Shown one piece after another: positions 19,101 through 33,937 of a stretch of DNA of 34,498 nt. The position numbers and the translations under genes are program-made. Within the stretch, counting starts at the first letter, position 1. The number at the start of each line of letters is the position of its first letter. Below the pieces are notes generated by a model. That model was not told where the DNA came from. It saw only the letters and a program-made list of their open reading frames with translations, and did not search any database. The stretch is from Hyphochytrium catenoides (Eukaryota > Protista > Hyphochytriomycota), in contig FLMG01003042.1 of the NCBI GenBank assembly GCA_900088475.1, forward strand, positions 1-34,498. The letters are read 5' to 3'.

Positions 19101-20398
19101 CGGGTCTGCCGCATCACGCTGGATCAGTAGAGCAAGCCGCGAGGAGGATGCGGGTCTGGCGTCTGCAGCTTTTGGCCAGCAGCAGCGGGACACTTGCACA
19201 ATGGATGCAGCTCCACCTCTCGTTGCCTCTGGCTGTTCCCAATTGATCTCTCCTTCCCACTCTGTCTATCATGCCTGATCTTTGTCTGTATCATATTACT
19301 CCGTCTGGCGGTCTGTAAAACCGTCTATGTGTACTCTGTCTCTGGCAATGACTCTATCTCTTGCTCTCTCTTTCTCGAATGGCTCTGTCCCGTATGTGAA
19401 GCTAGCTAATTTTGACATAATCGAGAGGTTGGAAGAGAAAGGGCAACCGTGGGAGAGGAGAAGCAGAGGGGAGAGGAACGGCTTTGTTCGAGACAGAACA
19501 GAGAAGAGATGACCTCACACAAGTAGGTTTACTTTGGAGAGGTAACCCAATACAAGGGTAATATAGGTCTATTGGGCTGACAAAGAGTGGCTCTAGATGT
19601 GTGTGTCTTGAAAGGAAGAGCGAGAAAGTGAGGGACCCCAAGGATCAAGGTTGGCTCGACTTGTTGTTACAGTGCATCCCTCCAAGTGTATGTACCAACA
19701 GGGGGGGACCCTGTCCACCCCACGGTGACGTCTTGGACTATTACGGAGTCAGCATTATCTATTAACTGTTGGAAGGGTGGGGATAGTCTCCGGTAACCCC
19801 AGTCACAACCGCTACCCTCTGAGACGCTAATAGTAGATATAGGGTCGGGGTGAGTACCCTCGCACTGTACACTAGTAGGTCTTTAATATCGGTTCTGATG
19901 GGCTTTCACAGAACAACAAAGGAGCTGTGCCAAAGAGCTTAAAGCCCCTGTGGCAAGGGGGGTTGTGAATGGCGCAATGCTGCACTTTTTTCCGCGGCAT
20001 AGACAAAGGGAGAAAAAAATTTTGGGGAAGTGTTCCGAGGTTTTTGCCGATGACGGGCATAAGCCTAAGTTATATTTAGGAACTCGGTCGCCTGGGTGTG
20101 AAGCTTGGTTGCTGTCGTTGGTTAGATGTATATCGCTTAGAGCCAGCGCACGTCCAGCTAGAGCCGTTGTTAGTCCTTTATAGAGTTCTTCAAGAGCTCT
20201 CTTGGTAGCTGTCTGAAGGACCTGCGTTTGCTTTGGCAAGGGGTTATTGGGGGTGCAGTACATCTAGTGCATCAGGAGGAGCGTGTCTCATTCTTACGAA
20301 ACCCAATGGTGCGTGCTGTTCTAGCGGCAGAGTATTCAGTCTCATGGCGGGGATAGAGCACAGGCTTTGCCATGGTTGAGAAGGCTAGTAGCCTAAAA

Positions 20399-23300
20399 AT
20401 GGCTTCTCGGGGAAGGAGGGCCTTTTGGTTCGTTCTCTTTGGGCTATGTCTGCAGCTTCTGGCTGCGGATCTCGCTCTTGCGCAAGGGCAGCAGTGTGGA
20501 ATATGCAAGGATTGTGGGAGTTGGTTCAGCGTACCTCTGTCATGCTGTGGAGGCAACAGTCCTTCATGTCAGGGGCTGCCATGTTGCGGTCCAGTCAATG
20601 GTATGCGTCGTGCGGCCATCTTGCAGCTTAGACCTATCCCGTAATCCCCGTCTGCTCACCTCTTCACTATCGGTGACTTCTTCTCTGGCTCTTTCTCTTG
20701 CTTCCCTATGCTCTCTATCTCTCTCGCACTTCATTCAGGCGGTTCTTTTCTGCATTTATCCTCGCATCGAGGTCATTCGAATGGATAGCAAACAAGCGCT
20801 AACATGAACTTCCTTCTCTATCATAGATAACTACAAGTACTCAGTCAACAACTGCCTGGCTTTCCCTGCTTGCAAAGCCGCACAGCCGCTGTGCTGCAGT
20901 AACAAACAGGGTTCCTGCTGCAATAACGTGAACGGACAAGAGGACCCATGCTGTGGCGGTAGGGACATCCTCCTCTTGGCCGTATTTTCCTTATCGCCCC
21001 ATCTCCCTCTCCATCTGTGTAACCTACCCTTCACAATTCACATCTCCTCTCTCTCTCTCTCCTTGTCCACTTCTTTATTAATTCTTCTGCCTGGCAAACT
21101 CTATGCTTTTCGGGTTGACTCTTCATCTTCCTTCGTCCTTTGGCGTCTCTCTTATGCAAATGCGTGACTGTTGTGGGCAACTCTCAGCTGGGGTTGCGGC
21201 TTTTGACGTCTCATCATCCTGTGTCTTGAGCACCACCTTGACGAGCTTCTTCCTGGCATTCCCTCACTGACCTATCGCCTTATTCCCACCGCGGTCCTTT
21301 CATCCTTTACTGAAGATTGACTTCCCACGCGTCCCTCTGTATGCCTTATCTTTTCACCTTACATCATCTTGCCCCTGCTTTTTCATGCTTTCTCTTTCCC
21401 CTTCTAGTCACTTCGACGCACTATCTCTGGCAGGCCAACGCCTCCGCGGTATCAATGCACAACAGCGTTGTTACTTTCACGATTCCCGCGTTTGACATGA
21501 TCAGGGAGTTTCCTCCTTCAGGGCAGCTCTCTCAAGTCATTCTCGAGCTGCCAGATGGCTGGGAAATCACCAGCCAAGTGCAGTGTGGTGTGGAGGTGCA
21601 GGATGGCACCGGATTCAAGAGAGAAACTAAAGGGTCTTGCATAAGAAGCTCCTCTGTGTCTCGGGGTAACCCGAACACCCCTGCGTCGATCCTCTTTTAC
21701 AACCTTGAGAGCTTCACAGGGGGAGACTTGACAGTTGTGGACCCATCTTACTTCCTGACCCTCATTATTAGAGGCTTAAATACGCCGTCATTGCCAATGC
21801 CAGCCCAGACGAAGCGCTTCTGGATGCTAAACGAATCGTTCTCCGTGAAGGCGGACTACAATGTCCAGAGAGTCGGACAAGGTCTGCTCTGTTTACATCT
21901 TTCTAATTCTTGTCTCATTCTCTCTTCTTTACCTCTTGCGCTACCTATGGTGAAACTTCTGAAGCAGAACCCTGGATTTCTACCCTTGGCGTGGCGAGTA
22001 TATGCCTTCATCCCTCATAGTTCCTTTCCATGAGCTGCTTTAGTCACTTCTCCTCCCTCTCTTCTCCGAGTTCTTCCACTCTCGCTTCATCTCTTCCGCT
22101 TGCTATCACTTCTCTGCTCACCGGACAATACGTCCTTCGCTGCAACTTTTTACAAAACAGGAGCGATTCGCACGGGTTTCTTCTCTCCCAAGAACGTGCA
22201 TGCCTCTATTCCTACAGAAGGACTGTTGGAGTTTATCTCCGAGTCTGCCCTTGAGCCTGATACGACGCTATTGTTAGACTTTCAGGAGACTCGCACCTTC
22301 ATAAATCCCAACGCCTCGTGGACGTTGGACAAAAATCAGGGACAGGTAGGCGGAAAGCTGTCTACAAACGTTACTCTTTCTCTATTCCCTTAAGGCTTCT
22401 TGTTACTGTCCCCGTTATTTCGCTTCTTCAAACTGTTACGACCGTTTCTGCACGCATGCCTTGAAGTCTTCAGCGTCTTGCAGCTGTCGTTCGTTGCCTC
22501 GCTTGAGCTTTTGAACTTTCTCACGTGCTTCCTATCTCACTCATTAAGTCCCTTTCGTTCATGATAGATTCCAGTGGCATGCGCTACCAATGGAAACGTC
22601 ACTACGCTTTGTAACCTGACGATTCCCACTGCCATCCCTCCGGACACCTCCGTCCGGTTAGGGGTCTCTAGCCTTGTCAATCCATCCATTGGCAACAAGG
22701 GGAGTGCAATCGGCATAGAGGCGAGGAGAGGAAACATTACAACGATGTCACTCTCCGCCCTACCTTCGTCTGTCATCTTGGAGAATGTGCTGCTCACAAA
22801 ATCTCCATCTCCCTTCTCTATTGTCTCTATCGTTATCTATGGCGTGTGCTTTCTCATCTGCGCAGGCCTGACCTGGACAAAAGCCTTGCAGTTTTCAAAG
22901 GTCTCCACGTCCCAGACTCCTATCTGGGCCCATCTGACAGCACTCTGTGCACTTTTAAACTTTCTGGTGCTCATCATTGGCAACGCGCTCTGGCTGACTG
23001 AGCCTACCATAACCTATCAATACCTCTCGGTCATATCTCTATGCCTGGTGTGGACCATGTTAGTGTCGGTCTGCTTCAACTGGGGCACGGCGATTGTACC
23101 AGGCAAGACAACGCTCTCGTACTCCTCCATACTTTGACACTCTATTTACCTTGTCGTCTGAGTTTGAGCTTAAAAGAATGGAAAGCCCTTGCTCGTCTCT
23201 CTATAGCCTTTTTTAGTTGTTGGTCCTTCCGGTCTATCGAAACAGTAGCGGTATCTGTCTAGGGCATTCCCTGGGCTGTGATCGATGTTTGAATCCTCCT

Positions 23301-26300
23301 TAGGAATCATTATACCTACCGTTTGTCCTAATCTTCCATCTTCGTGCAGGACTTCTGGCGGCACCATTCTGGAAGCTGGTCCTTCTCTATCTCGCGTGGG
23401 TTATGGGCTTCTATGCCTTCGTGGTATGGGGCGCACTAGCTAGCAGTGACATCCAGCAAGATTTCCTGGAATCCCGCCTTTTCTGCAAGAGCGGAGTGTG
23501 CGGCGTGGGCAGCACAGGGATCTCAGGTGATCCGGCGGAATATACGAACACTATCTACGCAGATGTCCAGCCTTCAGATTGGCGAGGATTCCCAGAGTCC
23601 AGCCTCCTCTCCATGATCAACGTCGTGACCTATGCAGCCTTTTGCTTAATTATCGGTCTTATCCTGGCCCTAGGAATGCATGTGATGAGAACTGGCAACA
23701 GCTTTGTGGAAGGCGGTGCACAGAACAATCATCAGGGTATGTAGATAGCCCAGCTTTCCCTCTTGATCTCCTTCAAGTTGCACCCGTTAGCCTGTTTAAT
23801 CCTTTTATTTGCGTGGCCGAGATCATTCCCTCTGTCTGCGAAGTTCGAGGCTATCTGTAGGTACCTAATCTTTGGCTCTAAATCCTCTTTTCCTTACAGA
23901 ATCTGGCCTGGAGTACTTTCACCTTAGGAAAGCTCTAAAAATGTTCCAGATGGCTATAGGTCTGGCCATCGTGGTCTATCTGATTGCGTTCCTCATGCAA
24001 CTTTGTCTCTTCTCCACTGCTATTAAGTACCAGTGGTGGTATGTCTTTGCCGTCTGGCTGCCAAATGCTGTTCCTCCTTGCTGCTTTCTTGCCCTTCAAT
24101 GGTCTAATTCTATGGACTGGCTGAAGACATTGCAGCAGAACCAAGGAGCGGNNNNNNNNNNNNNNNNNNNNNNNNNNNNNNNNNNNNNNNNNNNNNNNNN
24201 NNNNNCTCCCTCTCTTCACGATCCGTCCCTTTGGGACGTACAAGAGGACACTTGGAGCACGACGGGGGAGACAAAAGCTGGAGCAGTGGGCACTGGAGAT
24301 AGAGGGCTCGTTAAGTCTGGAGGAGAAAATGGGCTGGGCAAGAGTACGATACAGAGTGTGCAGTTCTTCATTCCTCTCACTCTTGAGCTTTCGTCCCCCC
24401 TTACCCCGGGGAGAGGTGTCATGGTCAAATGTGAGATCAGTAACCTTTCCTCTGCGGACGGACGGAGCTCCAGCTCTAGAGAGTTGGGTGTGGCGACGTA
24501 TCAGGTAGGTTGGACAGGTTCAATGCGAGCATCGATTAAGCTGGATTGTCAGGGACAGGAGAGAGCGAGAGGGAGTGAGCAAGAGATAGATTCATGGCGA
24601 GATATGCGAGACATTTGAAAATCTAAATCTCCTCCTCTTACTCTTATCCTGAAGGATTACGCTGATGCGGAGTGGGAGAATAATGGATCGACGGAGACGG
24701 TCTTTTCTTATGATGCTGAAAGTGGGAAGTACATCGTGCGCTTCCGGTACCTAGTCGAGGTAAGTCTGTCATCGGTCATTGGCTGCCTATCTCTGTTAAG
24801 CTTTGGCCCAGTATCTTGCTCTCAACCCCGCTTTTGTTTAGCTACTGGCGGTCTAGTCCTCTTCATGATCTAATGCTCCGGGCTCTTGCTCCCTGAGACG
24901 AGCCACTTTTGCTTCGCTTCTTTGGTTTTTGTCTTTCTCTGCTGATCTGCTTCTGACCTGCTTGGTCCTCTCACACGTTACAGGTGATCCGCGGCATGGT
25001 ATCCGACTTTGTGGTGCGCTTTTCAGTGATAGAGACAAGCGAGGTCTCGGAGGAAGTGGACTACAGCTCTCCCAACTCTACAGGGATGAACGAGTTGATG
25101 AGAGGAGGGAGAGACACAGACCCTTCCGACGTTGACGAGGATGAAGTGGATGCGGAAAGCGAGGAAGAGCACGAGCACTTCCTCGGATGCTTCTTCACAA
25201 CCTCAGCCTCGCTGTCCACTGCTGCAAAGGCCCATCAGCCTATCAGAATGACGGCACAGAAGGATAGTTCTGACAAGCAGGACGTTACGGCTGTACTCGT
25301 TGCACAGCCTATAGTGATTGCAAGAAGGGTTAAGCCCGGGGTCAGTGTACCGATCTAGCTCTCAGACTTTCTTTTGTTGTCACTCCTCATTTTTTCTTGC
25401 CAAGCAGGATTTGGGTCGTCTTTGTTGTGAACAGTCGATTCCTGTGAACGCTTTGTCTTGTCTCTTTCCCCCCATCTCTCTCTCTCTCTTTTTCTCTCTT
25501 TCCTTCTCTCTCTCCCCGCTTGCTCGCTGTCTCCTCTGTGATTCCCTTCTAATTGCGACAACGGCCAATTTGATCACCATCATTTCTCTATCAAACGTCT
25601 GTCGTCTGTGCAGCTGTCACCTCTGCTCACACAGTGACCCTCCCTCTACTACCTTCTGCACCCCTAGGCCAACCACATGATATCAAAACAGTTTGCTTAT
25701 GTAGCAGATAGAGGTGGACAGAGGAAGACCTTCATCGTGGAAGAGAACTTGACAGAGTCTGTCTTTGTCAATGATATTCCTCGACAAATCTTAGAGATTA
25801 TCCTCAGACAAAGGGTGCAGGACTATATGATGGCTAGGCACGACCAGAAAGTCTTTGAAGAGTACTTCAAGCAAAGGCTCAACAAAGAGTTCTTCGGTGG
25901 CTTCTATGAGACTCTGATTGACCACATTCAAGTAAGGAACAAAGCGTCGAAGGTTTATTCTCTCTGATCTGGAGATACGCGTAGCATCAACGGCCCTAAG
26001 ACCGACTCCATAATCTTCTGGCATTAGTCTTGGCTTCTCCTCATCGCTTTTTCTTTAGCTTCGGCTCTCAGCAATACTTCTCTTCTAAGCTTCAACTGTT
26101 GTCGTCACTTCCCACAGGACCATGGTGATCTTAGCTCAGTGCGAGCTTGGCTCGAAGATAGAGTCAGAGAAAGAAGAGAGTATGTGCGCGTTGTCAAGCA
26201 AGGCTGCAAGCTGGCTCTGGAGAGAGACAAGAAGGTGGGACGGGACTTGCTTTGAAAGCTAGGGGGGGAAGGAAATAATGAACGAGGAAGAAGAGAGGGG

Positions 26301-28415
26301 AGAAAGGAAAGCATCATTCTGTTGGAATCTCTGTATCTAGCTCAATTCTCACCTTCTTTATGTTGCAGGATGTACTATTCAAGTCTTCGGCTCTGAAAAA
26401 GGATGACGCCGTTCGGTTCCACCCCATCAATCTGCACTATCAGCAAATGTGGGTGGGTCCAGAAGAGTACTATCGGGGTCCAGAGAAGATAATGAATGCC
26501 GAGACAGGTACACGCCTCCATCTTTCTCTTCCTACTACCCCTTAGACCTTTGATTGCAGCTTTAATGCCTATTTGCCATACAGATGAAGTCTATTCCCTA
26601 GTCCCTCAGCTTGGTTGTTCCCAGTTCAACTCTCGCTCCTGTCTTTTGGCTGTCCCTCTCACCTTTTGTCTCTCCGATTCTATTGTCTTTAGGAATCTAT
26701 GACACAGTGACGGTCGGTGCAATGGCCGCTCACGTTTACAAGTTCAAGAATGGAGGCTTACAACGAATGGTGGAACAGGCAGAGAAGCACTACTCGCCCG
26801 ATGTAAGGGGCCAGCGCGCACGCTCTCTCTCTCTCTCTCCTTCTCTCTGCATTGCCCTCCCCCCCTCTCTCCCCAATGTCTGGTATCACCCTTCAGTGAT
26901 CCTAATGCTTGTCTTTCTTTCTCTATTTGACGTTGATCAGGGTCCGGCCGCGTACCCTGATTGGTCCGAGGAAGAACAGAAGCAAGATGACCGCTTGTGG
27001 GAGATCAAGGTGCGCAGAGATGTCTGTGTCACGCAGGCAGTGTCCGCTCTGGTACAATCCTTTGCAGCCAAGTTGGACATAGCGCTCCGACATCACGATC
27101 AGGAAGTAGGGGAGGCGCTATTGAGGCAATGGACAAAGCTGGGCTTCCTTCTCCAGGTAAGATGGAGTCACGCAATGAATACACATAAAGACAGCCCCAG
27201 AGAACGGTCCCCCGTCTTCCCTTTTCCTTGGGGTTCAGTGTCTGCCTTCTGACTGAGCAATGTCACCCTGTCGATCTTACATTCTTCACTGCATTGCCGC
27301 TGCTCTTTTCTTGGCCGTTCTGCACATTTACTAACTTTTTGTAAAAATCATCATCTCTTGCGTCTTCTCTCACTTTGTCCTCTCACTTCGCGCATCTCTC
27401 TTCCTCTCCAGGTGGAGTCTCTCCTCTCCACTCACGGGAAAGAAGTAGGAATGATAGAGGACATGGCGGACGCGATATCGGAGCTCAATCACGTGGCGTT
27501 CTTGCTGCAAGAAGAAGGATCTGTGTCTCCTGAAGACACCGTCTCAAGCCTGACCTTTAGAAACTCTGGCGCCTTAGACGAGGACCTTGGACCGGGAGTG
27601 ATATCTGTGGAAGTCTTTGAAAGCTTTGAGGTACGACTTGTCTATAGGAAAGACTGCAAGAGAGTGAATCTATCGAGGATATTATGCGATGCCACGCGAA
27701 GTCCGCGACAAGAAGCGGAAGCGGGAAGCACCATGCCTTCTTATGATTTACCTTCTGTCTTTTTAACTCTACAGGCCTTCCAAAAGCAAGCGAAGTGGCG
27801 GGGAGACGTTCCTCTCTATCTTACGACAAGAAGACCCAGTCTCAGTGCTTTGGCAACGCAAGGGTAAGGAAAGAAAAACAGAGAGAGAGAGATGGAAAGA
27901 ACGAGCAGCCGGAAGTTACAGCGTGAACCTCTGCCCTTGTTCCCTTGTCGTTCTAACGCTCCTCAAACTTGTTTCTATGTCTCCCTAGATACTTCATTCG
28001 CTTCAAGGTCAGGACTGGCGCGGTCAAGCTGCCTCGAACAAGAGGATGCTTTGTCCGGGTGATGGCGCTTCTCTTCACACAGGTAAGGCAGTGGGCGACG
28101 GATAAGAAGAAGCTGCTACAAGAGTTGGATATAAAACAACGGGAAAGAGAAAGAGAGACTATCACTTGTTTTCTTATCGCTCATCGTTCCTCCTCTGGTG
28201 CCCCACTTCTCCCTCTTCTTTTCTCCTTCCTCAGGGTATCAATGAGATGCAGACAATAGCAAACAGCACGAACTCCTCCTTTACGGAGATCCAAGATAAG
28301 ATTAACGGGAAGAGCATCAAAGTCCTCACGGAATATGCCAGTGGACTCTTCAACTTTTTCTCCAAGGTACGTTTCTTCTCCCTGCCTGTGTCTCCCTCCG
28401 GCAGAAACTTACCAG

Positions 28416-28446
<31 letters not shown>

Positions 28447-29457
28447 NNNNNNNNNNNNNNNNNNNNNNNNNNNNNNNNNNNNNNNNNNNNNNNNNNNNNT
28501 CTCTCTCTCTCTCTCTGTTTATCTCTTTCTCTCTCTCCTACATTTCCTCTACTAGGATCCCCATCCTGTTATAGATCGTACTTTTGATCTTCATCAATGT
28601 TTGGAGAACCTACAGTTGGTCTTTGATCAGACGAAGTTTAAAAAGGTACGACCTGAAGCACGCTTTGCACGTTTCTCTGAGTTCTCTCTCTTAGCTCTTC
28701 CTCTCTCTCCCGCTCCTGCATGATCACTAGTTGCCAGGCGTGCTTGCCTATCTTCTCCCTTGCGTGTGTGATGACCCTTTGCTAACCTTCTTTTTGTCGC
28801 CTGACCCACCTTTCCTGTTGATCTGGCTCATTTTAGACAAAAGCAGTGGAGATCTTGCAGCATGCGTCTGACTTCTGTCGTGAGGTTAACGCTGGTCGAG
28901 TGACTGTCTGCAAGAGCGCCAAAGACAGAACTTCGATGTCCGTTACGCTGGAGCAGGGAAGAATCCTCGTTAGGAAGCATTCCCATCCTGCGAAACTACT
29001 GGCTCAAACCGTGGCAACGATGAGGTGAGAGGCATAGTCTTAGGCAGACGGGAAGGCGTCTAGTACTCAAGAAACAGAGATCCAGAGAATGGGGAAGGCA
29101 CAGAAGCTTCAAAGGACTATAAAGCGGGAGAGCAGGACAGAGAGAGGGAGCAAGAAAGAGAGGGAGCAAGAAGAGAGAGAGCGGACAGAGAAAGAGAGAG
29201 GCATATATATAGAGAGAGAGAGAGCCACGGAGAGACAGAAAGAGGTACAGGGTGTTAATGGGAACAGCCAGGTGAGAGTGTCTAGGCTCACACTCTTCTT
29301 CACGCTTTTATCAATCTACAGAGCAAAGGGCGTCCGAATAGAGAACGCGTACAAGAACACGGGACGACGCTACTTTGCCTTCAATGCTTTCCAGCGGCAG
29401 ATGCTTCCCGAAGAGTACCGCTGTCCACCTGGCACTGGAGGCCAGAACAAGAGTTAA
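20399..29457 (+). CDS. 7TM receptor-like / inositol polyphosphate 4-phosphatase (INPP4-type) fusion protein, ~1,590 aa
   Basis: Exons: 20399 (or 20372)-20600, 20827-20958, 21408-21881, 22161-22345, 22568-23102, 23350-23736, 23900-24504 (spans the gap at 24152-24205, which may hide an intron), 24655-24759, 24984-25340, 25668-25931, 26118-26234, 26369-26507, 26693-26802, 26941-27156, 27412-27630, 27775-27863, 27989-28082, 28235-28366, 28556-28645, 28837-29024, 29322-29457. Signal peptide MASRGRRAFWFVLFGLCLQLLAADLALA. Seven hydrophobic helices at 22810-24105. INPP4 hallmarks: FKSS..K...FHPINLH, YDTVTVGAMAAH..FKNGGL, ESLLSTHGKEVGMIEDM, LFTQGINEMQT, CKSAKDRTSMSVTLEQ, GVRIEN..KN.G...FAFN. Confidence 0.88.
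23103..23349 (+). other. Non-canonical GC-AG intron
   Basis: Donor CCAG|GCAAGA and acceptor CGTGCAG|GA join TM3 to TM4 in phase 1. The nearby GT dinucleotides I checked are in the wrong phase. Confidence 0.75.
24152..24205. other. Assembly gap inside gene 2 (other gaps: 7785-7808, 10004-10013, 28447-28499, 31347-31440)
   Basis: Runs of n, mostly next to microsatellite or pyrimidine/purine tracts. Confidence 0.98.
28909..28932 (+). other. INPP4 catalytic CX5R P-loop (CKSAKDRT)
   Basis: tgc aag agc gcc aaa gac aga act; this is the signature of INPP4A/B-type phosphatases. Confidence 0.95.
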
Positions 29458-30071
29458 TCTTCTTGTTCCCCACCAGTCTTGATTTGCCCCTCTAGTTGAC
29501 TCTCTCCTCTCTCTATCCCTCTCTCTTACTTCACCGCTACCCCTTTTGAACCATTATTTATGCTTTGGTATATTATGGAGCAGCCGCTTCTCAGCTAGCC
29601 GAGCCTGCTATCATATAGAAAGAAACAAGCATCTCCTTTTATTATATAACAAGAAGCCTGAGGTTTTTTATCTTTCTTTAGACACCTGTTGTCTGTGCCA
29701 AAGCCTTTAGCCAGCCTGTCCGTTTTCTGTCTGTCTCTCCTTTCCTTCTCTCTCTCTCTCTCTCCCTCTTTCTCTCTCGCTCCCTTTGTTTGCCTCTCTT
29801 CAGCTCTCCTATGAGCTGTGCATTTAGTGTTTGCCACCCAGATTGCTGCCGTGTCATTTCCCTTGTGCTCTCTCCTCTCTCTGCGCACTTGAAGTACTAT
29901 TCCATGCCATCCAAGAGACGCAAGGACCTGATGTCTTGAAGATGTACATCCCACCTTGCCAAGGACGGAGCCACTTTTGCTACGAGGAAAAGGAGTCTCT
30001 CAGCACTACGGATAGCTTGTAGAGCCAAGAAGAAGGACGCTTCTTTCTTGCGTCTCTTGAAGGCAAAGCTA

Positions 30072-32682
30072 TCAATTCGTGTCTTCCCCTCTCCCACTGG
30101 CAAGCAGAGGCGTTGCCTCACCTGACCGACACGACCATTGGCTATTTCCCACAGAAGGCGAGGAGAAGCCGAAGAAGCTCTTTCTTTTTATCTCTCTCTC
30201 CCTCTTCTCTCCGGCTGGTGTCTCTCCCTCGCTATAACGTGACAGTGAATGCATCAGGAGCATCTTTAGTCCGTACAGAAGAGAAGCGAGAAGGTTAATC
30301 GCCAGTCCTGACCAGAAAGAAAAGCCGTCCATGGTGAAGAGAGTAAAGCCAACCACTATGAGCTTAGGTAAAGTGATGAGAAAGACGCCTGTCCAGCCAC
30401 CTGGGACTTTGTATGGGCGTTCCGCGTGAGGGAGAGAGAGACGAAGCTTGATGAAGGACGCAAACTCGAAGATTAGCTTCAAACAGAGCATCATCATCGA
30501 CGCCTGGAGCAAGCCAAGCAAGAAAGACAGGTGATGAGACGATGAGCAAGGCGGCGAGCTCAAGGAAATCAGCGAAAGAGAACCACCAGGAGCCACTTTA
30601 AGACATTGAGACAAAGGCGCCAGGAGAAATCGTAGATGAAGACGGACTCTGAACAAGAAGGAACTTGTTCTTGTTTGAGGAGAGAAAGAAAGCCAGAGAA
30701 AGAGAAGAGAAAAGAGGGAGCAAGAGGGAGATTGATAAAGAGACAATATCATAGAGAGGGACACGGTGAGAGAGGGACAGAGAGAGAGATGTAAGCCAGG
30801 AGAGAGATGTAAGCCACGAGGAGAAAGAGAGAGAATGTGGGAGCAGTGCCAGAATGAGCCAACAATTATTGTCAGGACAAAGGAGAGAAGATAACAGAGA
30901 AAGTACTTCCGAGGGACAGGAAAGAGGAGAGAGAGGCCTCAATACTGTTCTTACCTGGACCATCTCTTCAAACTCAAAGCCCAGGAGCAGGCAGAGCAAG
31001 ACAGAGTGTGTCACCACACTTACTACTGGGGAGTTATGCTTCTCCCAGCTGATGGCAAAGAAAGAGGGAAGATGTGCTTCCATGATCTCTCTCTCTGTTC
31101 GCTCTCTCCGTCTTCCTCTTCTGCCCCTCCTTCCTCCCGCAAAAGCCCACAGCTGCCTGCTGCTATGGGCCAGTCCCGCGTTGTAGAGGTTGAAGTTCGC
31201 TAGGATAGAAGCGGCGATAACGGTGTAACCAAAGAGAGGAGAGAGCTCAAGCATGAACTTTCCGAAAGAGCCACTATCCCATTGACTGTTGAAGGCAGAC
31301 AGAGAAGAGGAGCGAAGAGAAAATGGGAGCACATCGAGGTAGAGGCNNNNNNNNNNNNNNNNNNNNNNNNNNNNNNNNNNNNNNNNNNNNNNNNNNNNNN
31401 NNNNNNNNNNNNNNNNNNNNNNNNNNNNNNNNNNNNNNNNGAGGAAGGAGAATGAGACTAGCCCTGCAGGCGGCTGCCTCTGCCCGTCCCCCCAAGACCA
31501 CCTGCTGTTTCCCTTCTGCCGTCTCAGAGTCCCTTTAACGCTATATTGCTTCTCACAAAGTCCGTGGTGAGCACACCTTCCTCTTGGGAGACTTACTTCT
31601 CTTTTTCTCTCTCTCTCTCTCTTTCTCTCTCTTTGTTTCTCTCTTGCTCGCTCGTCCCTTCTGTGTGTCTCTCTCTTTTTCTATAGAGCTTGTGCCTCAG
31701 CTCACGTCGCACCTAAGGTCTGGTTGCATCTGAATTCCAACGAGGAGCGGGAAGCAGTAAGTGGCCAGGACCATGATAACTGTGAGAGATGCTCCGCGGA
31801 GGAGGGTGGGCCCAGGATTGTACACCTCACCAGCGAACGAACCCAGAGAGTCCCAACCTTAAGACAGAGTGAGAAGAGGCAGAGAGAGAAAGAGAGAGAA
31901 GAGACGGGATAGTGGGCTGTTAACGAAGGTAAATACCCCCGTCCCAACCACATTGTGCCTCCCTGCAATCTTCGTTTTCGGTCTCTTCTATCTCACAAGT
32001 CTCGCCATCCTCAGAGCTCAAACCTTTCTCCGGCTTCTCTCGCTCTCTTTTGTTGCTCTCTCTCTCTTTTGTTTCTCTCTTTCTTCTTTTTTCTCTCTTT
32101 CTTTCTCTCTCTCTCTCTCCTTCTCCCTTTGTCTGTTCACATTCTTAGTGGCTCTTCCTCCTACCATTACCTGAGAAAGCCCAAAGCATCGTGGACCAGA
32201 AGACGCCCCAGGCGCACTTCTCAGGCACAATGGCCCAGGATGTTCCTCCTTCTTCTAAGCGCCTAAACTCCCAGACGAAGGAGAGAATAAAGGGAAAGAT
32301 GACTGCGGTGGTGACCAGAATGGAAACAAATGACAGGGTTTGCACCCCGAAGAGGTTGAGAACCATCGAGCCAAGGATAACGATAAGCTTCGTGATGACC
32401 TTCCCTGCTGGAGAGAGAGACCCTATACGGAACGGTAGGAGAGGAGGAAGAGGCATAGAGAGAGAGAGAGAGAGGACGGAGAGAGAAGCAGAGAGAGACA
32501 GTGAATGGGAGAGGGCAATAGAGCGGGAGAGAGTCGGTAAACCTTCCGCCGCATGGCTGCGCTTCTTCCCTCCCTCTATTCCTCTAGGCTGCCACCTTTA
32601 CTATCAAGTCCTGTTCTCTACCTCTAAAAGAACACAATGAATAATAGGCTAGAGCAAGAGGTCACATGAGAGGCGTATATAA

Positions 32683-32728
<46 letters not shown>

Positions 32729-32804
32729 GTTCTCTCTCTCGCGCCCTCTCTCTTTGCTCTCTATTCATAGTTCAAAGCAAGAGGTCACATGAGAGGCGTC
32801 GGTA

Positions 32805-32842
<38 letters not shown>

Positions 32843-33764
32843 AGGTCTCGTTCTCACTCTCGCGCTCTCTCTCTTCTTTATTGCTCTCTCTCCCTATCTC
32901 CTGTTGCTTCTTGGTTGCTCGTACCGCAGCCATTCTCCACGTAAGCGGCGACGAGGTAAGGGTAGAGAGCAAGATCTGATACATTGGCCAGGAGTCCGTT
33001 CAGTCCGGACACAAAGCCAGCAAACGATCCAAAGGCGGCTTGCACCCAGATGACGCTGCCTCCGTTCTCAGGGAGAAGAGAAGACAACTCTGCGGTCATC
33101 ATCACCTAAGCAGGAGAGAAGACATCAGCACCGAAAGGAAGAAAGAAAAAGAGAGAAGGCAGAAGATAAAAGAGAGATTAAAGATTGAGAGTCGAGGACC
33201 TGGAAAGGGGTAACCCAAAGCAAATAGATATCGAGAAAGGTGACAGGCTACTGACGGCAAAGGGTTATAAGACAGGAAGGCGGAATAAGGAGAGAAAGAG
33301 GGATGGGGAATGGGAGAGAGAGGAGAGAGAAAAAAAGAGGGAGAGGGAGAGAGAGAAGGGGAGCGGGGGAGAGAGACAAAGGGAAAGGGAGAGGAAAGAT
33401 ATTTGGAACAAAGAAAAGAAGAGCACCCCGAGAGATAGATCACAGGATTTGAAAGAATCAAGGGTACGACCAAAGAAACGCGAGGAACGAGGGCTTCCAC
33501 CGCTTCTCTCCGACCTTCCCATTCTCCATTCTTTCTCTCTCTCTCTCTCTCTCTCTCCCCTCTCGCTCTTCTTTTTCTTTCTTTCCTTACCTGGGGAAGC
33601 ACCCAGGCGATCGGTAGGATAGCGAGAGCGATGAGAGTGTAGAGAGGACCTCCGGAGCGGACAGCGACCTCTATCCCATAAGGACCGCCGCAGACCAGAA
33701 AATAAGCGATAAAGGCTAGCTTTATAACCCCCAAGGGACGGCGATGGTGCTTTGGCGGCTCCGC
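30072..33764 (-). CDS. APC-superfamily LAT/PUT-type polyamine / amino-acid permease (5' end unresolved; probable extra exon(s) at ~34114-34420)
   Basis: Exons (-): 33764-33591, 33105-32925, 32407-32171, 31857-31713, 31285-30955, 30503-30072, together 500 codons with consistent phases. Family motifs: YFLVCGGPYGIE, AELSSLLPENGGSVIWVQAAFG, DLALYP, LWAFSGWDSLGSFAGEVYNP, SSRQL, FIKLR...RPYKVPGG. Confidence 0.88.
32653..32890. repeat. Tandem duplication, 2 x ~123 bp, inside a permease intron
   Basis: agcaagaggtcacatgagaggcgt starts at 32653 and 32776. Each copy is followed by taatctctct(ct)n...gtctcgttctc..ctcgcgc.ctctct. Confidence 0.9.
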
Positions 33765-33937
33765 CTGAGAGAGAGAGAGAGAGAGAGAGAGAGTCTCCTG
33801 AGCAATAAAGAGGTTTGGAAAGGACTAGGAACACTGAAAAATCCTAGTAGAGACGAAGAATGGGACATAGGGAGAGAGGCACCGGTAGAGAGAGAAGAGA
33901 GAGAGAGAGAAAAGGTAGAGAGAGAGAGAGAGAATAG

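What the first reader, a model, noticed from the sequence alone, without database searches (positions are those of the whole stretch)
20399..29457. Single-chain receptor-lipid phosphatase: large ectodomain + 7TM + C2-like + catalytically intact INPP4
Seen in sequence: one phase-consistent gene model running from a signal peptide through ~450 aa of ectodomain and seven TM helices to a C2-like region (EWENNGSTETV) and a full INPP4 domain with CKSAKDRT. Established: animal INPP4A/B are soluble C2 + phosphatase enzymes acting on PI(3,4)P2, and 7TM-enzyme fusions (GPCR-bigrams, including a GPCR-INPP type) are described mainly from oomycetes. Inference: this is a ligand-gated phosphoinositide phosphatase, a one-protein signalling system needing no G protein. 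The long Cys-rich ectodomain, and a host whose intron-dense, microsatellite-rich genome does not look oomycete-like, may make it an undescribed variant or an extension of the known range.
Basis: partly seen in the sequence, partly recalled or inferred. Interest (0 to 1): 0.85.

Follow-up and report, generated by a model that had tools for sequence, protein, structure and literature searches.

The report
Receptor fused to lipid 4-phosphatase gene
This is very probably one real 21-exon gene for a membrane receptor joined to an intact inositol-lipid 4-phosphatase, a design already catalogued (but never tested) in water moulds as "GPCR-INPP", so it is a new member of a known kind, probably in a sister lineage.

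Summary
A 21-exon model on the + strand (20399-29457, about 1,600 aa) encodes these parts in order:
- a signal peptide
- a Cys-rich module
- three Ig-like beta-sandwiches
- a GPCR-fold 7TM
- a C2 domain
- an INPP4-type phosphatase with CKSAKDRT

The gap at 24152-24205 lies inside exon 7. DNA contigs of three runs bridge it with 75 letters (25 codons), so the frame holds. Allelic variants show that the post-gap part is coding in that same frame. The 75 letters were not shown and no RNA run was listed, so an uninterrupted transcript is still unproven. The second gap is intronic.

The novelty claim fails. A search with the TM1-3 exon alone returned oomycete proteins with the same layout and the same ectodomain. 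One is P. infestans PITG_02812, listed as "GPCR-INPP" in van den Hoogen et al. 2018 (Table S3).

What may be new is the host. Intron density, heterozygosity and the pattern of runs fit the hyphochytrid Hyphochytrium catenoides (an inference), which that survey did not include. Ligand gating without a G protein is untested for any member.

First-reader notes record a similar gene elsewhere in this genome (s1-362670).

The parts
20399..29457 (+). Whole coding region. The 21 exons are: 20399-20600, 20827-20958, 21408-21881, 22161-22345, 22568-23102, 23350-23736, 23900-24504, 24655-24759, 24984-25340, 25668-25931, 26118-26234, 26369-26507, 26693-26802, 26941-27156, 27412-27630, 27775-27863, 27989-28082, 28235-28366, 28556-28645, 28837-29024, 29322-29457.
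   Evidence: phases are consistent and there is no internal stop; tblastn with 56 oomycete family proteins hits only these + strand exons, in the same order. An alternative in-frame ATG lies at 20372.
20399..20485 (+). Signal peptide (aa 1-29)
   Evidence: Hydrophobic core at aa 9-27 followed by ALA-QG. Not run through a dedicated predictor.
20486..20958 (+). Cys-rich N-terminal module (aa 30-111, 16 Cys), in exons 1-2
   Evidence: the Cys pattern is shared with the P. infestans, Albugo, Lagenidium and Pythium proteins.
21408..22804 (+). Ectodomain body (aa 112-410), in exons 3 to 5. Three tandem Ig-like beta-sandwiches, by homology.
   Evidence: alignment; the AlphaFold model of P0046:1-903 shows three beta-sandwiches, whose best Foldseek matches are tandem Ig-like adhesin and integrin-leg arrays.
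22805..24102 (+). Seven-helix GPCR-fold domain (aa 411-706), in exons 5-7. Includes the family's conserved TM7 motif WLPNAVPPCCFLALQW.
   Evidence: hydropathy; 180-bit gapless match to the family profile; the homologue's 7TM aligns with solved GPCRs at Z 15.5-17.8, and all 50 top entries are GPCR-fold.
23103..23349 (+). Intron 5, with a GC donor. The alternative GT-AG intron 23096-23303 adds 13 aa to intracellular loop 2.
   Evidence: the family profile prefers the GC form (179.7 against 167.4 bits). Both forms are in frame. RNA is needed to decide.
24152..24205 (.). Assembly gap inside exon 7. The real content is 75 letters.
   Evidence: table 5: one bridging contig in each of X1, X2 and X3 'skips 54, 75 letters between'.
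24206..24504 (+). Post-gap part of exon 7: the linker and the first C2 strands
   Evidence: 9 synonymous and 3 non-synonymous allelic variants in the model's frame, against 0/12 and 1/11 in the other two frames; the PSL..W motif just after the gap matches the homologues' TPS(I/F)xF..W.
24350..25330 (+). C2-like domain (about aa 790-990), in exons 7-9, with an acidic insertion in exon 9. Boundaries are approximate.
   Evidence: residues 7-181 of the homologue model match C2 domains (BON1 Z 13.8; PI3K-gamma, SHIP2 and NEDD4 at Z above 10). Mapped onto the window by the alignment.
25668..29457 (+). INPP4-type phosphatase domain (aa 995-1591), in exons 10-21
   Evidence: 40-47% identity to the oomycete proteins; 196 of 243 family-invariant columns are kept; the family profile matches the P-Rex2 IP4P domain at E 1e-34. 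P-Rex1 Z 29.6 and SopB Z 20.
28909..28932 (+). Catalytic P-loop CKSAKDRT (CX5R)
   Evidence: The motif is identical to that of human INPP4B aa 842-849 as quoted in PMC3248162.
28447..28499 (.). Second assembly gap, in intron 18, flanked by (TC)n
   Evidence: It lies between exon 18 (ends 28366) and exon 19 (starts 28556).

Best explanation
One gene encodes a type I membrane protein of the GPCR-INPP bigram family, of the INPP4 type (the PITG_02812 group).

**Shown**
- The exon structure and the domain order.
- A gap bridged in frame.
- Purifying selection on the linker, in the 7TM frame.
- Colinear homology to oomycete proteins over ectodomain, 7TM, C2 and phosphatase.
- GPCR, C2 and IP4P folds in models of two homologues.
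- An intact CX5R loop.

**Inferred topology.** The ectodomain faces outside. The C2 domain and the phosphatase face the cytosol, at the inner leaflet.

**Inferred mechanism (about 40%).** A ligand bound by the Ig-like/Cys-rich ectodomain or the 7TM pocket shifts TM6 and TM7. These are encoded in the same exon as the linker and the first C2 strands. The shift would change how the C2-phosphatase unit meets the membrane. That would switch removal of the 4-phosphate from PI(3,4)P2, or possibly PI(4,5)P2 or soluble inositol phosphates. This is analogous to the way a voltage sensor drives the PTEN-like phosphatase plus C2 domain of Ci-VSP.

The alternative mechanism is that the 7TM only anchors and localises a constitutive enzyme, with or without also coupling to G proteins.

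**Host.** Probably Hyphochytrium catenoides, a sister lineage of the oomycetes (inference).
For: **Gene model.**

**The fusion is conserved.** phmmer with exon 5 alone (part of the ectodomain plus TM1-3) against 1.84 billion representatives gave 7 hits. Five of them carry CKSAKDRT near the C-terminus. P0001 aligns to the model in one HSP from aa 107 to 1550.

**The family is oomycete and already published.**
- All named hits are oomycete.
- P0046 matches PITG_02812, classed as GPCR-INPP.
- The P. infestans GPCR-INPP rows seen in the Table S3 excerpts are annotated as inositol-3,4-bisphosphate 4-phosphatases.

**The join across the gap.**
- The bridge is 75 letters in three runs.
- Of 21 exonic variants, 17 fall at codon position 3 and 16 are synonymous. 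The post-gap segment is coding only in the model's frame.
- There is no in-frame ATG between the gap and 24421.
- The homologues are continuous across this region.

**Folds.**
- GPCR, Z 17.8.
- C2, Z 13.8, and IP4P, Z 29.6.
- Tandem Ig-like ectodomain.

**Host.**
- The model's mean exon is 227 nt and mean intron 214 nt. The H. catenoides genome paper gives 228 and 208.
- That paper also describes a diploid genome with SNP frequency 0.0275, sequenced as one HiSeq lane plus two GAIIx lanes.
- This matches X1 (2017) plus X2 and X3 (2011, one sample), each holding two haplotypes.
- The gene tree puts the window outside the oomycete clade.
Against: - No transcript evidence: no RNA run was listed.
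- The 75 bridging letters were not displayed, so a stop codon in them is not excluded.
- The bridging runs are probably the data the assembly was built from, so they are not independent of it.
- The structures were predicted for homologues (P0046, P0001; 21-47% identical by region), not for the window's own protein. A spliced window protein could not be handed to the tools.
- No Pfam family matches the 7TM or the ectodomain.
- No member of the class has a demonstrated ligand, substrate or regulation.
- Whether the host makes PI(3,4)P2 is unknown.
- The host identification is circumstantial. The tree has long branches and is rooted on a paralogue.
Confidence: 0.85

Rival explanations
1. These are two adjacent genes wrongly read as one. 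A receptor-like 7TM gene ends in or near the gap, and a separate soluble C2-INPP4 gene starts after it.
For: - The join runs through unread letters, and no RNA run was listed.
- Animal INPP4A/B are soluble C2-phosphatase enzymes.
- 25 random codons would hold a stop about 70% of the time.
Against: - The bridge is 75 letters, a multiple of three.
- The post-gap 215 bases before the first in-frame ATG (24421) show a synonymous-biased variant pattern in the 7TM frame only. They must therefore be translated from upstream.
- 75 letters is shorter than any of the 20 introns (minimum 125).
- More than 30 homologues from at least 10 oomycete genera carry both halves in one protein and align continuously here. 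One such gene on a metagenome contig is a single uninterrupted 4,167-base ORF.
Confidence: 0.07
2. It is one real gene, but the 7TM part is only a membrane anchor or localiser. The phosphatase is constitutive, or regulated by other inputs such as G proteins, Ca2+ or lipids through the C2 domain. It is not gated by a ligand.
For: - No sequence match to any curated GPCR family.
- No functional data for the class.
- The C2 domain could target the membrane by itself.
Against: - The 7TM is the second best conserved part of the protein after the phosphatase: 111 family-invariant columns, of which 61 are kept in the window.
- Its nearly invariant residues include the TM7 motif.
- A large conserved ectodomain with a Cys-rich module and Ig-like domains is costly for a mere anchor.
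- The fold matches ligand-binding GPCRs, many of them solved with a G protein bound.
Confidence: 0.45
3. It is a decaying pseudogene or an assembly chimera.
For: There are two gaps in the locus, with microsatellites beside one of them.
Against: - 21 exons are open and in phase.
- 81% of the family-invariant phosphatase columns are kept, and the P-loop is intact.
- 16 of 21 exonic allelic differences are synonymous.
- Contigs from three runs tile the 2.5 kb examined, including the gap.
Confidence: 0.03

Closest known systems
Oomycete GPCR-INPP bigrams of the INPP4 type, for example Phytophthora infestans PITG_02812 (1855 aa), PITG_12266 and PITG_02728 (van den Hoogen et al. 2018, mBio, PMC5784254, Table S3)
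   Same: - Same order of parts: signal peptide, Cys-rich module, Ig-like ectodomain, 7TM, C2, then INPP4 with CKSAKDRT.
- Colinear alignment along the whole length, with 21-23% identity in the ectodomain, 28-33% in the 7TM and 40-47% in the phosphatase.
   Different: - 20 introns here, against a single uninterrupted ORF in the closest metagenomic relative.
- A shorter ectodomain, lacking one insertion.
- It branches outside the sampled oomycete clade.
- The probable host is a hyphochytrid, which that survey did not cover.
Animal INPP4A/INPP4B (type I/II inositol-3,4-bisphosphate 4-phosphatases)
   Same: A C2 domain followed by a CX5R phosphatase with the identical CKSAKDRT motif.
   Different: The animal enzymes are soluble, with no signal peptide, ectodomain or 7TM. 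The presence of an NHR2-like region was not tested.
IP4P domain of P-Rex1/P-Rex2
   Same: The only solved structures with this fold. The family profile hits P-Rex2 at E 1e-34 and P-Rex1 at Z 29.6.
   Different: The P-Rex sequences lack the catalytic Cys-x5-Arg. One search shows MCSSGVHRC and MCGTGMQRS at the aligned loop. The window keeps the catalytic loop.
Ci-VSP (voltage-sensing phosphatase)
   Same: It works alike in principle: a transmembrane sensor is joined in one chain to a CX5R phosphoinositide phosphatase plus a C2 domain at the inner leaflet. This rests on established knowledge; the Ci-VSP C2 domain appears among the fold matches.
   Different: - The sensor is a four-helix voltage sensor, not a 7TM with an ectodomain.
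- The phosphatase is PTEN-like, not INPP4-like.
- The C2 domain follows the phosphatase rather than preceding it.
- There is no homology of the whole.
GPCR-PIPKs (Dictyostelium RpkA, Phytophthora GK proteins) and the 7TM-5-phosphatase fusions of Nannochloropsis
   Same: The same logic: a 7TM N-terminal half fused to a phosphoinositide-metabolising enzyme.
   Different: The enzyme domains are different (a PIP kinase, and a 5-phosphatase of the exo-endo-phosphatase type). The 7TM families differ, and the examples seen have no large ectodomain.

Membership tests
GPCR-INPP bigram, INPP4 type (PITG_02812 group) | N-terminal seven-helix GPCR-like domain homologous to that of the family | tested here: met
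   - Exon 5 alone retrieves the family.
- The window's 7TM matches the family HMM at 180 bits without gaps.
- The homologue's 7TM has a GPCR fold, Z 17.8.
GPCR-INPP bigram, INPP4 type (PITG_02812 group) | C-terminal inositol polyphosphate 4-phosphatase domain with CX5R | tested here: met
   - CKSAKDRT at 28909-28932.
- 40-47% identity to the family's phosphatase domains.
- 196 of 243 invariant columns are kept.
GPCR-INPP bigram, INPP4 type (PITG_02812 group) | Both halves in one reading frame on the DNA | tested here: met
   - The exon phases are consistent.
- The gap is bridged by 75 letters, or 25 codons.
- The post-gap segment is coding only in the 7TM frame.
GPCR-INPP bigram, INPP4 type (PITG_02812 group) | An uninterrupted ORF through the gap and a single transcript | not testable with these tools
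   The 75 letters were not printed (table 5c).
GPCR-INPP bigram, INPP4 type (PITG_02812 group) | Shared ectodomain (Cys-rich module plus tandem beta-sandwiches) | tested here: met
   The alignment matches module by module. BLASTP HSPs run from model aa 29-77 to 714 against P0002-P0005.
GPCR-INPP bigram, INPP4 type (PITG_02812 group) | Oomycete host (the range described so far for the 4-phosphatase type) | tested here: inconclusive
   - The gene has 20 introns.
- The run pattern and the exon and intron means fit the H. catenoides paper.
- The tree places it outside the oomycetes, but on a long branch.
- The organism is coded in the tools.
INPP4 (type I/II inositol-3,4-bisphosphate 4-phosphatase) | CKSAKDRT catalytic motif | tested here: met
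   and the motif as quoted in PMC3248162.
INPP4 (type I/II inositol-3,4-bisphosphate 4-phosphatase) | C2 domain N-terminal of the phosphatase | tested here: met
   Shown on the homologue P0001, where residues 646-820 match C2 domains at Z 10-13.8. The window aligns there, including W-x4-S-T-E-T. The window's own sequence was not folded.
INPP4 (type I/II inositol-3,4-bisphosphate 4-phosphatase) | Soluble cytosolic protein | tested here: not met
   A signal peptide, a 410-aa ectodomain and seven TM helices precede the C2 domain.
INPP4 (type I/II inositol-3,4-bisphosphate 4-phosphatase) | Hydrolysis of the 4-phosphate of PI(3,4)P2 | not testable with these tools
   This needs an enzyme assay.
G-protein-coupled receptor in the functional sense | Sequence membership in a curated GPCR family | tested here: not met
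   No Pfam family matches the window's exons or six full-length homologues. No solved GPCR is found by the sequence profile.
G-protein-coupled receptor in the functional sense | Seven-helix GPCR fold | tested here: met
   all 50 top entries are GPCRs or a designed GPCR-like fold, with 213-267 residues aligned at Z 15.5-17.8. This was done on the homologue P0046.
G-protein-coupled receptor in the functional sense | Coupling to heterotrimeric G proteins, or ligand binding | not testable with these tools
   No experimental data exist for any member of the class.

The most novel reading that the evidence does not exclude
The window would hold the first GPCR-INPP4 seen outside oomycetes, in a hyphochytrid. 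That would mean the whole receptor-phosphatase, with its Cys-rich and Ig-like ectodomain, was already assembled in the common ancestor of Pseudofungi. It would also act as a directly ligand-gated 4-phosphatase, a chemical counterpart of the voltage-sensing phosphatase Ci-VSP, without a G protein.
Probability: 0.25. Interest if true: 0.6.

Novelty: new member of a known kind. Interest (0 to 1): 0.35.

Why it matters
**For this finding.** It settles that the fusion is real at the DNA level despite the assembly gap. It removes the claim of a new architecture, because the same protein, ectodomain included, is listed among the published oomycete GPCR-INPPs.

**What it adds.**
- The published "GPCR-INPP" label covers two unrelated enzyme types. 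Every P. infestans row seen in the Table S3 excerpts is annotated as a 4-phosphatase, and the one Nannochloropsis gene whose annotation was fully shown is a 5-phosphatase.
- The family's parts now have fold assignments: tandem Ig-like domains, a GPCR fold, a C2 domain and an IP4P-type phosphatase.
- The family probably predates the split between oomycetes and hyphochytrids.

**Wider relevance.** Oomycetes include major crop and fish pathogens, and these receptors have no animal or plant counterpart. A non-pathogenic sister organism that can be grown in culture and carries the same receptor could serve as a model for finding the ligand and the substrate.

Tried and rejected
- **RNA evidence.** The search for RNA runs listed none. 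The 'any' search gave only DNA holders and three tiny unrelated-looking runs.
- **Pfam.** Scans of ten exons and of seven full-length hits gave nothing for the family, and Pfam appears to have no INPP4 model. The only hint was a weak IpgD match on the catalytic exon.
- **Sequence profile of the N-terminal half against PDB.** Only chance matches to designed propeller proteins.
- **Foldseek with the 903-residue model.** It returned only ectodomain-type matches. The 7TM match needed the VIA-align wide search.
- **Alternative GT-AG intron 5 (23096-23303).** Considered because the GC donor is unusual, but rejected as the first choice on the family profile. It stays possible.
- **Frame 1 after the gap.** It is also open as far as 24505. 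Rejected because 0 of 12 variants are synonymous in it.
- **Handing in the window's own spliced protein.** It has no reference, so it was not given to the search or structure tools. Homologues and single exons were used instead.
- **Identifying the host directly.** Not possible, because organism names are coded and no self-hit appeared in either protein search.


Full report
**1. What is in the sequence**

Translating the three + frames of 20000-29800 gave open segments that join through AG acceptors and GT donors into a 21-exon model from the ATG at 20399 to the TAA at 29455-29457 (last exon corrected). The coding sequence is 4,776 bases and has no internal stop. One donor is GC, at 23103.

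The product is 1,591 aa with the gap counted as 18 codons, or about 1,598 aa with the true 25. It holds these parts in order:
- a hydrophobic signal-peptide-like N-terminus
- about 80 aa with 16 cysteines
- about 300 aa with 6 N-glycosylation sequons
- seven hydrophobic helices between aa 414 and 704
- a linker
- the stretch with EWENNGSTETV
- about 600 aa ending in a domain with CKSAKDRT, at 28909-28932

**2. The gaps**

The second gap (28447-28499) lies in intron 18, inside a TC microsatellite, and does not matter.

The first gap (24152-24205) lies inside exon 7. This exon encodes TM6 and TM7 before the gap, and the linker and first C2 strands after it.

Three DNA runs hold the locus. In each of them a contig joins 24151 to 24206 with 75 letters in between, rather than the 54 Ns. 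Seventy-five is 25 codons, so the frame on the two sides is the same.

The runs also carry two haplotypes. I placed the 40 listed differences on the model.
- Of the 40, 21 are exonic. Of those, 17 fall on codon position 3 and 16 are synonymous.
- In the post-gap part of exon 7, the model's frame gives 9 synonymous and 3 non-synonymous changes. The two other frames give 0/12 and 1/11. One of those other frames is also open, so this test was needed.
- Seven of the post-gap variants lie before the first in-frame ATG after the gap (24421). This coding stretch must therefore be read from upstream.

What remains untested is the content of the 75 letters, which the tool did not print, and the transcript. 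No RNA run was listed. The bridging runs are probably the assembly's own data.

**3. Relatives**

I searched 1.84 billion representative proteins with exon 5 alone, which encodes the end of the ectodomain and TM1-3. Seven proteins came back. Five of them have CKSAKDRT about 80 residues from their C-terminus, and they align with the model over both halves. P0001 aligns in a single HSP from model aa 107 to 1550. A membrane-domain query thus pulls out phosphatase fusions, which is independent support for the architecture.

The named members are from Albugo candida, Aphanomyces euteiches and Phytophthora kernoviae. A second search with P0001's 7TM region found 35 proteins of about 1,700-1,960 aa. 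They come from Phytophthora, Pythium, Globisporangium, Hyaloperonospora, Peronospora, Bremia, Plasmopara, Peronosclerospora, Lagenidium and Albugo. Several carry the UniProt name 'inositol-3,4-bisphosphate 4-phosphatase'. Apart from the partial entries, all carry CKSAKDRT.

Running 56 of these proteins by tblastn against the window hits only the model's + strand exons, in the same order. The homologues are continuous across the gap region. The conserved TM7 motif lies before it, and a TPS..W motif that matches the window's PSL..W lies just after it.

**4. It is a described class**

Van den Hoogen et al. 2018 (PMC5784254) defined GPCR-bigrams, including 'GPCR-INPP': seven genes in P. infestans and one to nine in other oomycetes. 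Outside oomycetes they found the class only in Nannochloropsis.

In the excerpts of their Table S3 that I saw, the P. infestans GPCR-INPPs are annotated as 'inositol-3,4-bisphosphate 4-phosphatase, putative'. PITG_12266 (1541 aa) has a signal peptide and a large ectodomain. P0046 from my search has the length of PITG_02812 (1855 aa) and the N-terminal residues shown for it in the table excerpt.

The one Nannochloropsis member whose annotation was fully shown is a 5-phosphatase, so the published label covers two unrelated enzyme folds.

The window's ectodomain is not special. Its Cys-rich module and each later segment align with the oomycete proteins.

**5. Folds**

The spliced window protein has no reference, so I folded homologues, using family alignments that include window exons as rows (A1 and A2).

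P0046:1-903 (pLDDT 71) shows three beta-sandwiches followed by seven long helices.
- Foldseek matched the ectodomain to tandem Ig-like arrays of adhesins and integrin legs.
- The wide VIA-align search matched residues about 480-780 to solved GPCRs at Z 15.5-17.8, and all 50 top entries are GPCR-fold.

P0001:640-1388 (pLDDT 74, pTM 0.77) has two parts.
- An N-terminal C2 domain: BON1 Z 13.8; PI3K-gamma, SHIP2 and NEDD4 C2 domains at Z above 10.
- A phosphatase domain matching the P-Rex1 IP4P domain (Z 29.6) and SopB (Z 20).

The family profile hits P-Rex2 by sequence at E 1e-34. The window's catalytic exon alone hits it at 1e-5, and the alignment shows that P-Rex lacks the Cys and Arg the window keeps.

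The window retains 196 of 243 family-invariant phosphatase columns and 61 of 111 in the 7TM.

**6. Splice detail**

Intron 5 has a GC donor in my preferred model. A GT-AG alternative (23096-23303) is also in frame and adds 13 aa to intracellular loop 2. The family HMM aligns the GC form without gaps at 179.7 bits, and the GT form with two insertions at 167.4 bits. Neither form changes the helix count.

**7. Host**

Organism names are coded. Four lines of evidence point away from an oomycete.
- The gene has 20 introns, whereas the nearest metagenomic relative is one uninterrupted ORF.
- The model's mean exon is 227 nt and mean intron 214 nt. The Hyphochytrium catenoides genome paper gives 228 and 208.
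- That paper also describes a diploid genome with SNP frequency about 0.0275, a scaffold N50 of 35.6 kb, and one HiSeq lane plus two GAIIx lanes deposited under an old SRX accession. This matches one 2017 run plus two 2011 runs of one sample and one study, each with two haplotypes.
- A quick ML tree places the window outside the clade of Aphanomyces, Albugo and the peronosporaleans, though on a long branch and rooted on a paralogue.

I take the host to be H. catenoides or a close relative, with about 75% confidence. H. catenoides is not in the 2018 survey's tables. I found no paper linking Hyphochytrium with GPCR-bigrams.

**8. Mechanism**

The topology and an intact catalytic loop are shown by the sequence and the homology above. 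Established knowledge adds two points. INPP4B needs the Cys of CKSAKDRT, and it hydrolyses PI(3,4)P2.

Coupling between the receptor half and the enzyme is inference. Points in its favour:
- The 7TM and the ectodomain are conserved.
- TM6-TM7, the linker and the first C2 strands share one exon.
- Ci-VSP is a precedent for a membrane sensor that drives a CX5R lipid phosphatase with a C2 domain.

The authors of the class state that direct activation is untested. The substrate in this lineage is unknown.

**9. Verdict**

This is a real and well-supported gene, and a new member of the known GPCR-INPP (INPP4-type) family. It probably extends the family's range to the sister group of the oomycetes. 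It is not a new architecture.

First-reader notes of this scan record another gene of the same layout, and one with CX5K, elsewhere in this genome. I did not check them.

Noticed in passing
If so, two large receptor-like genes lie side by side. I did not examine it.
   Followed up: no
window 23000-25500: Two haplotypes occur at about equal contig depth in runs X1 and X2. Some 200-base contigs differ at up to 10 positions. There is a 9-base in-frame-length indel behind 23329 and an indel cluster of about 20 bases at 24916-24926 in intron 8. The genome looks like a strongly heterozygous diploid.
   Followed up: partly
window 1428-3056, - strand: A 543-aa open reading frame without introns. It has a Cys-rich, Ser/Thr-rich N-terminal half and several hydrophobic segments. 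I did not search for a function.
   Followed up: no
window about 32100-33800, - strand: Exon-like open segments resemble an amino-acid or polyamine (APC-type) transporter, for example the stretch with CGGPYGIEVAV. They are interrupted by GA/TC-rich introns.
   Followed up: no
window 6486-8746, 25460-25520, 28424-28520, 29140-29240: Long (TC)n/(GA)n microsatellites lie in introns and intergenic DNA. At least three of the five assembly gaps (7785, 28447, 31347) sit next to such tracts, which probably caused them.
   Followed up: no
L001 7302-11468 (metagenome scaffold KOPF15-1, ERZ23491423): The closest relative found, P0001 (1388 aa), is an unnamed single-ORF gene on a gene-dense metagenomic contig. 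It lacks the N-terminal Cys-rich module. In the quick tree it does not group with any named oomycete lineage, and its position relative to Aphanomyces is unresolved. Its organism is unknown.
   Followed up: partly
PMC5784254 Table S3c, compared with finding s1-331052: The published class name 'GPCR-INPP' mixes two enzyme types. The P. infestans entries seen in the excerpts are annotated as 4-phosphatases, and the one Nannochloropsis entry fully shown as a 5-phosphatase. An earlier follow-up in this scan equated a 7TM-5-phosphatase gene of this genome with the oomycete GPCR-INPPs. That equation may need checking.
   Followed up: partly
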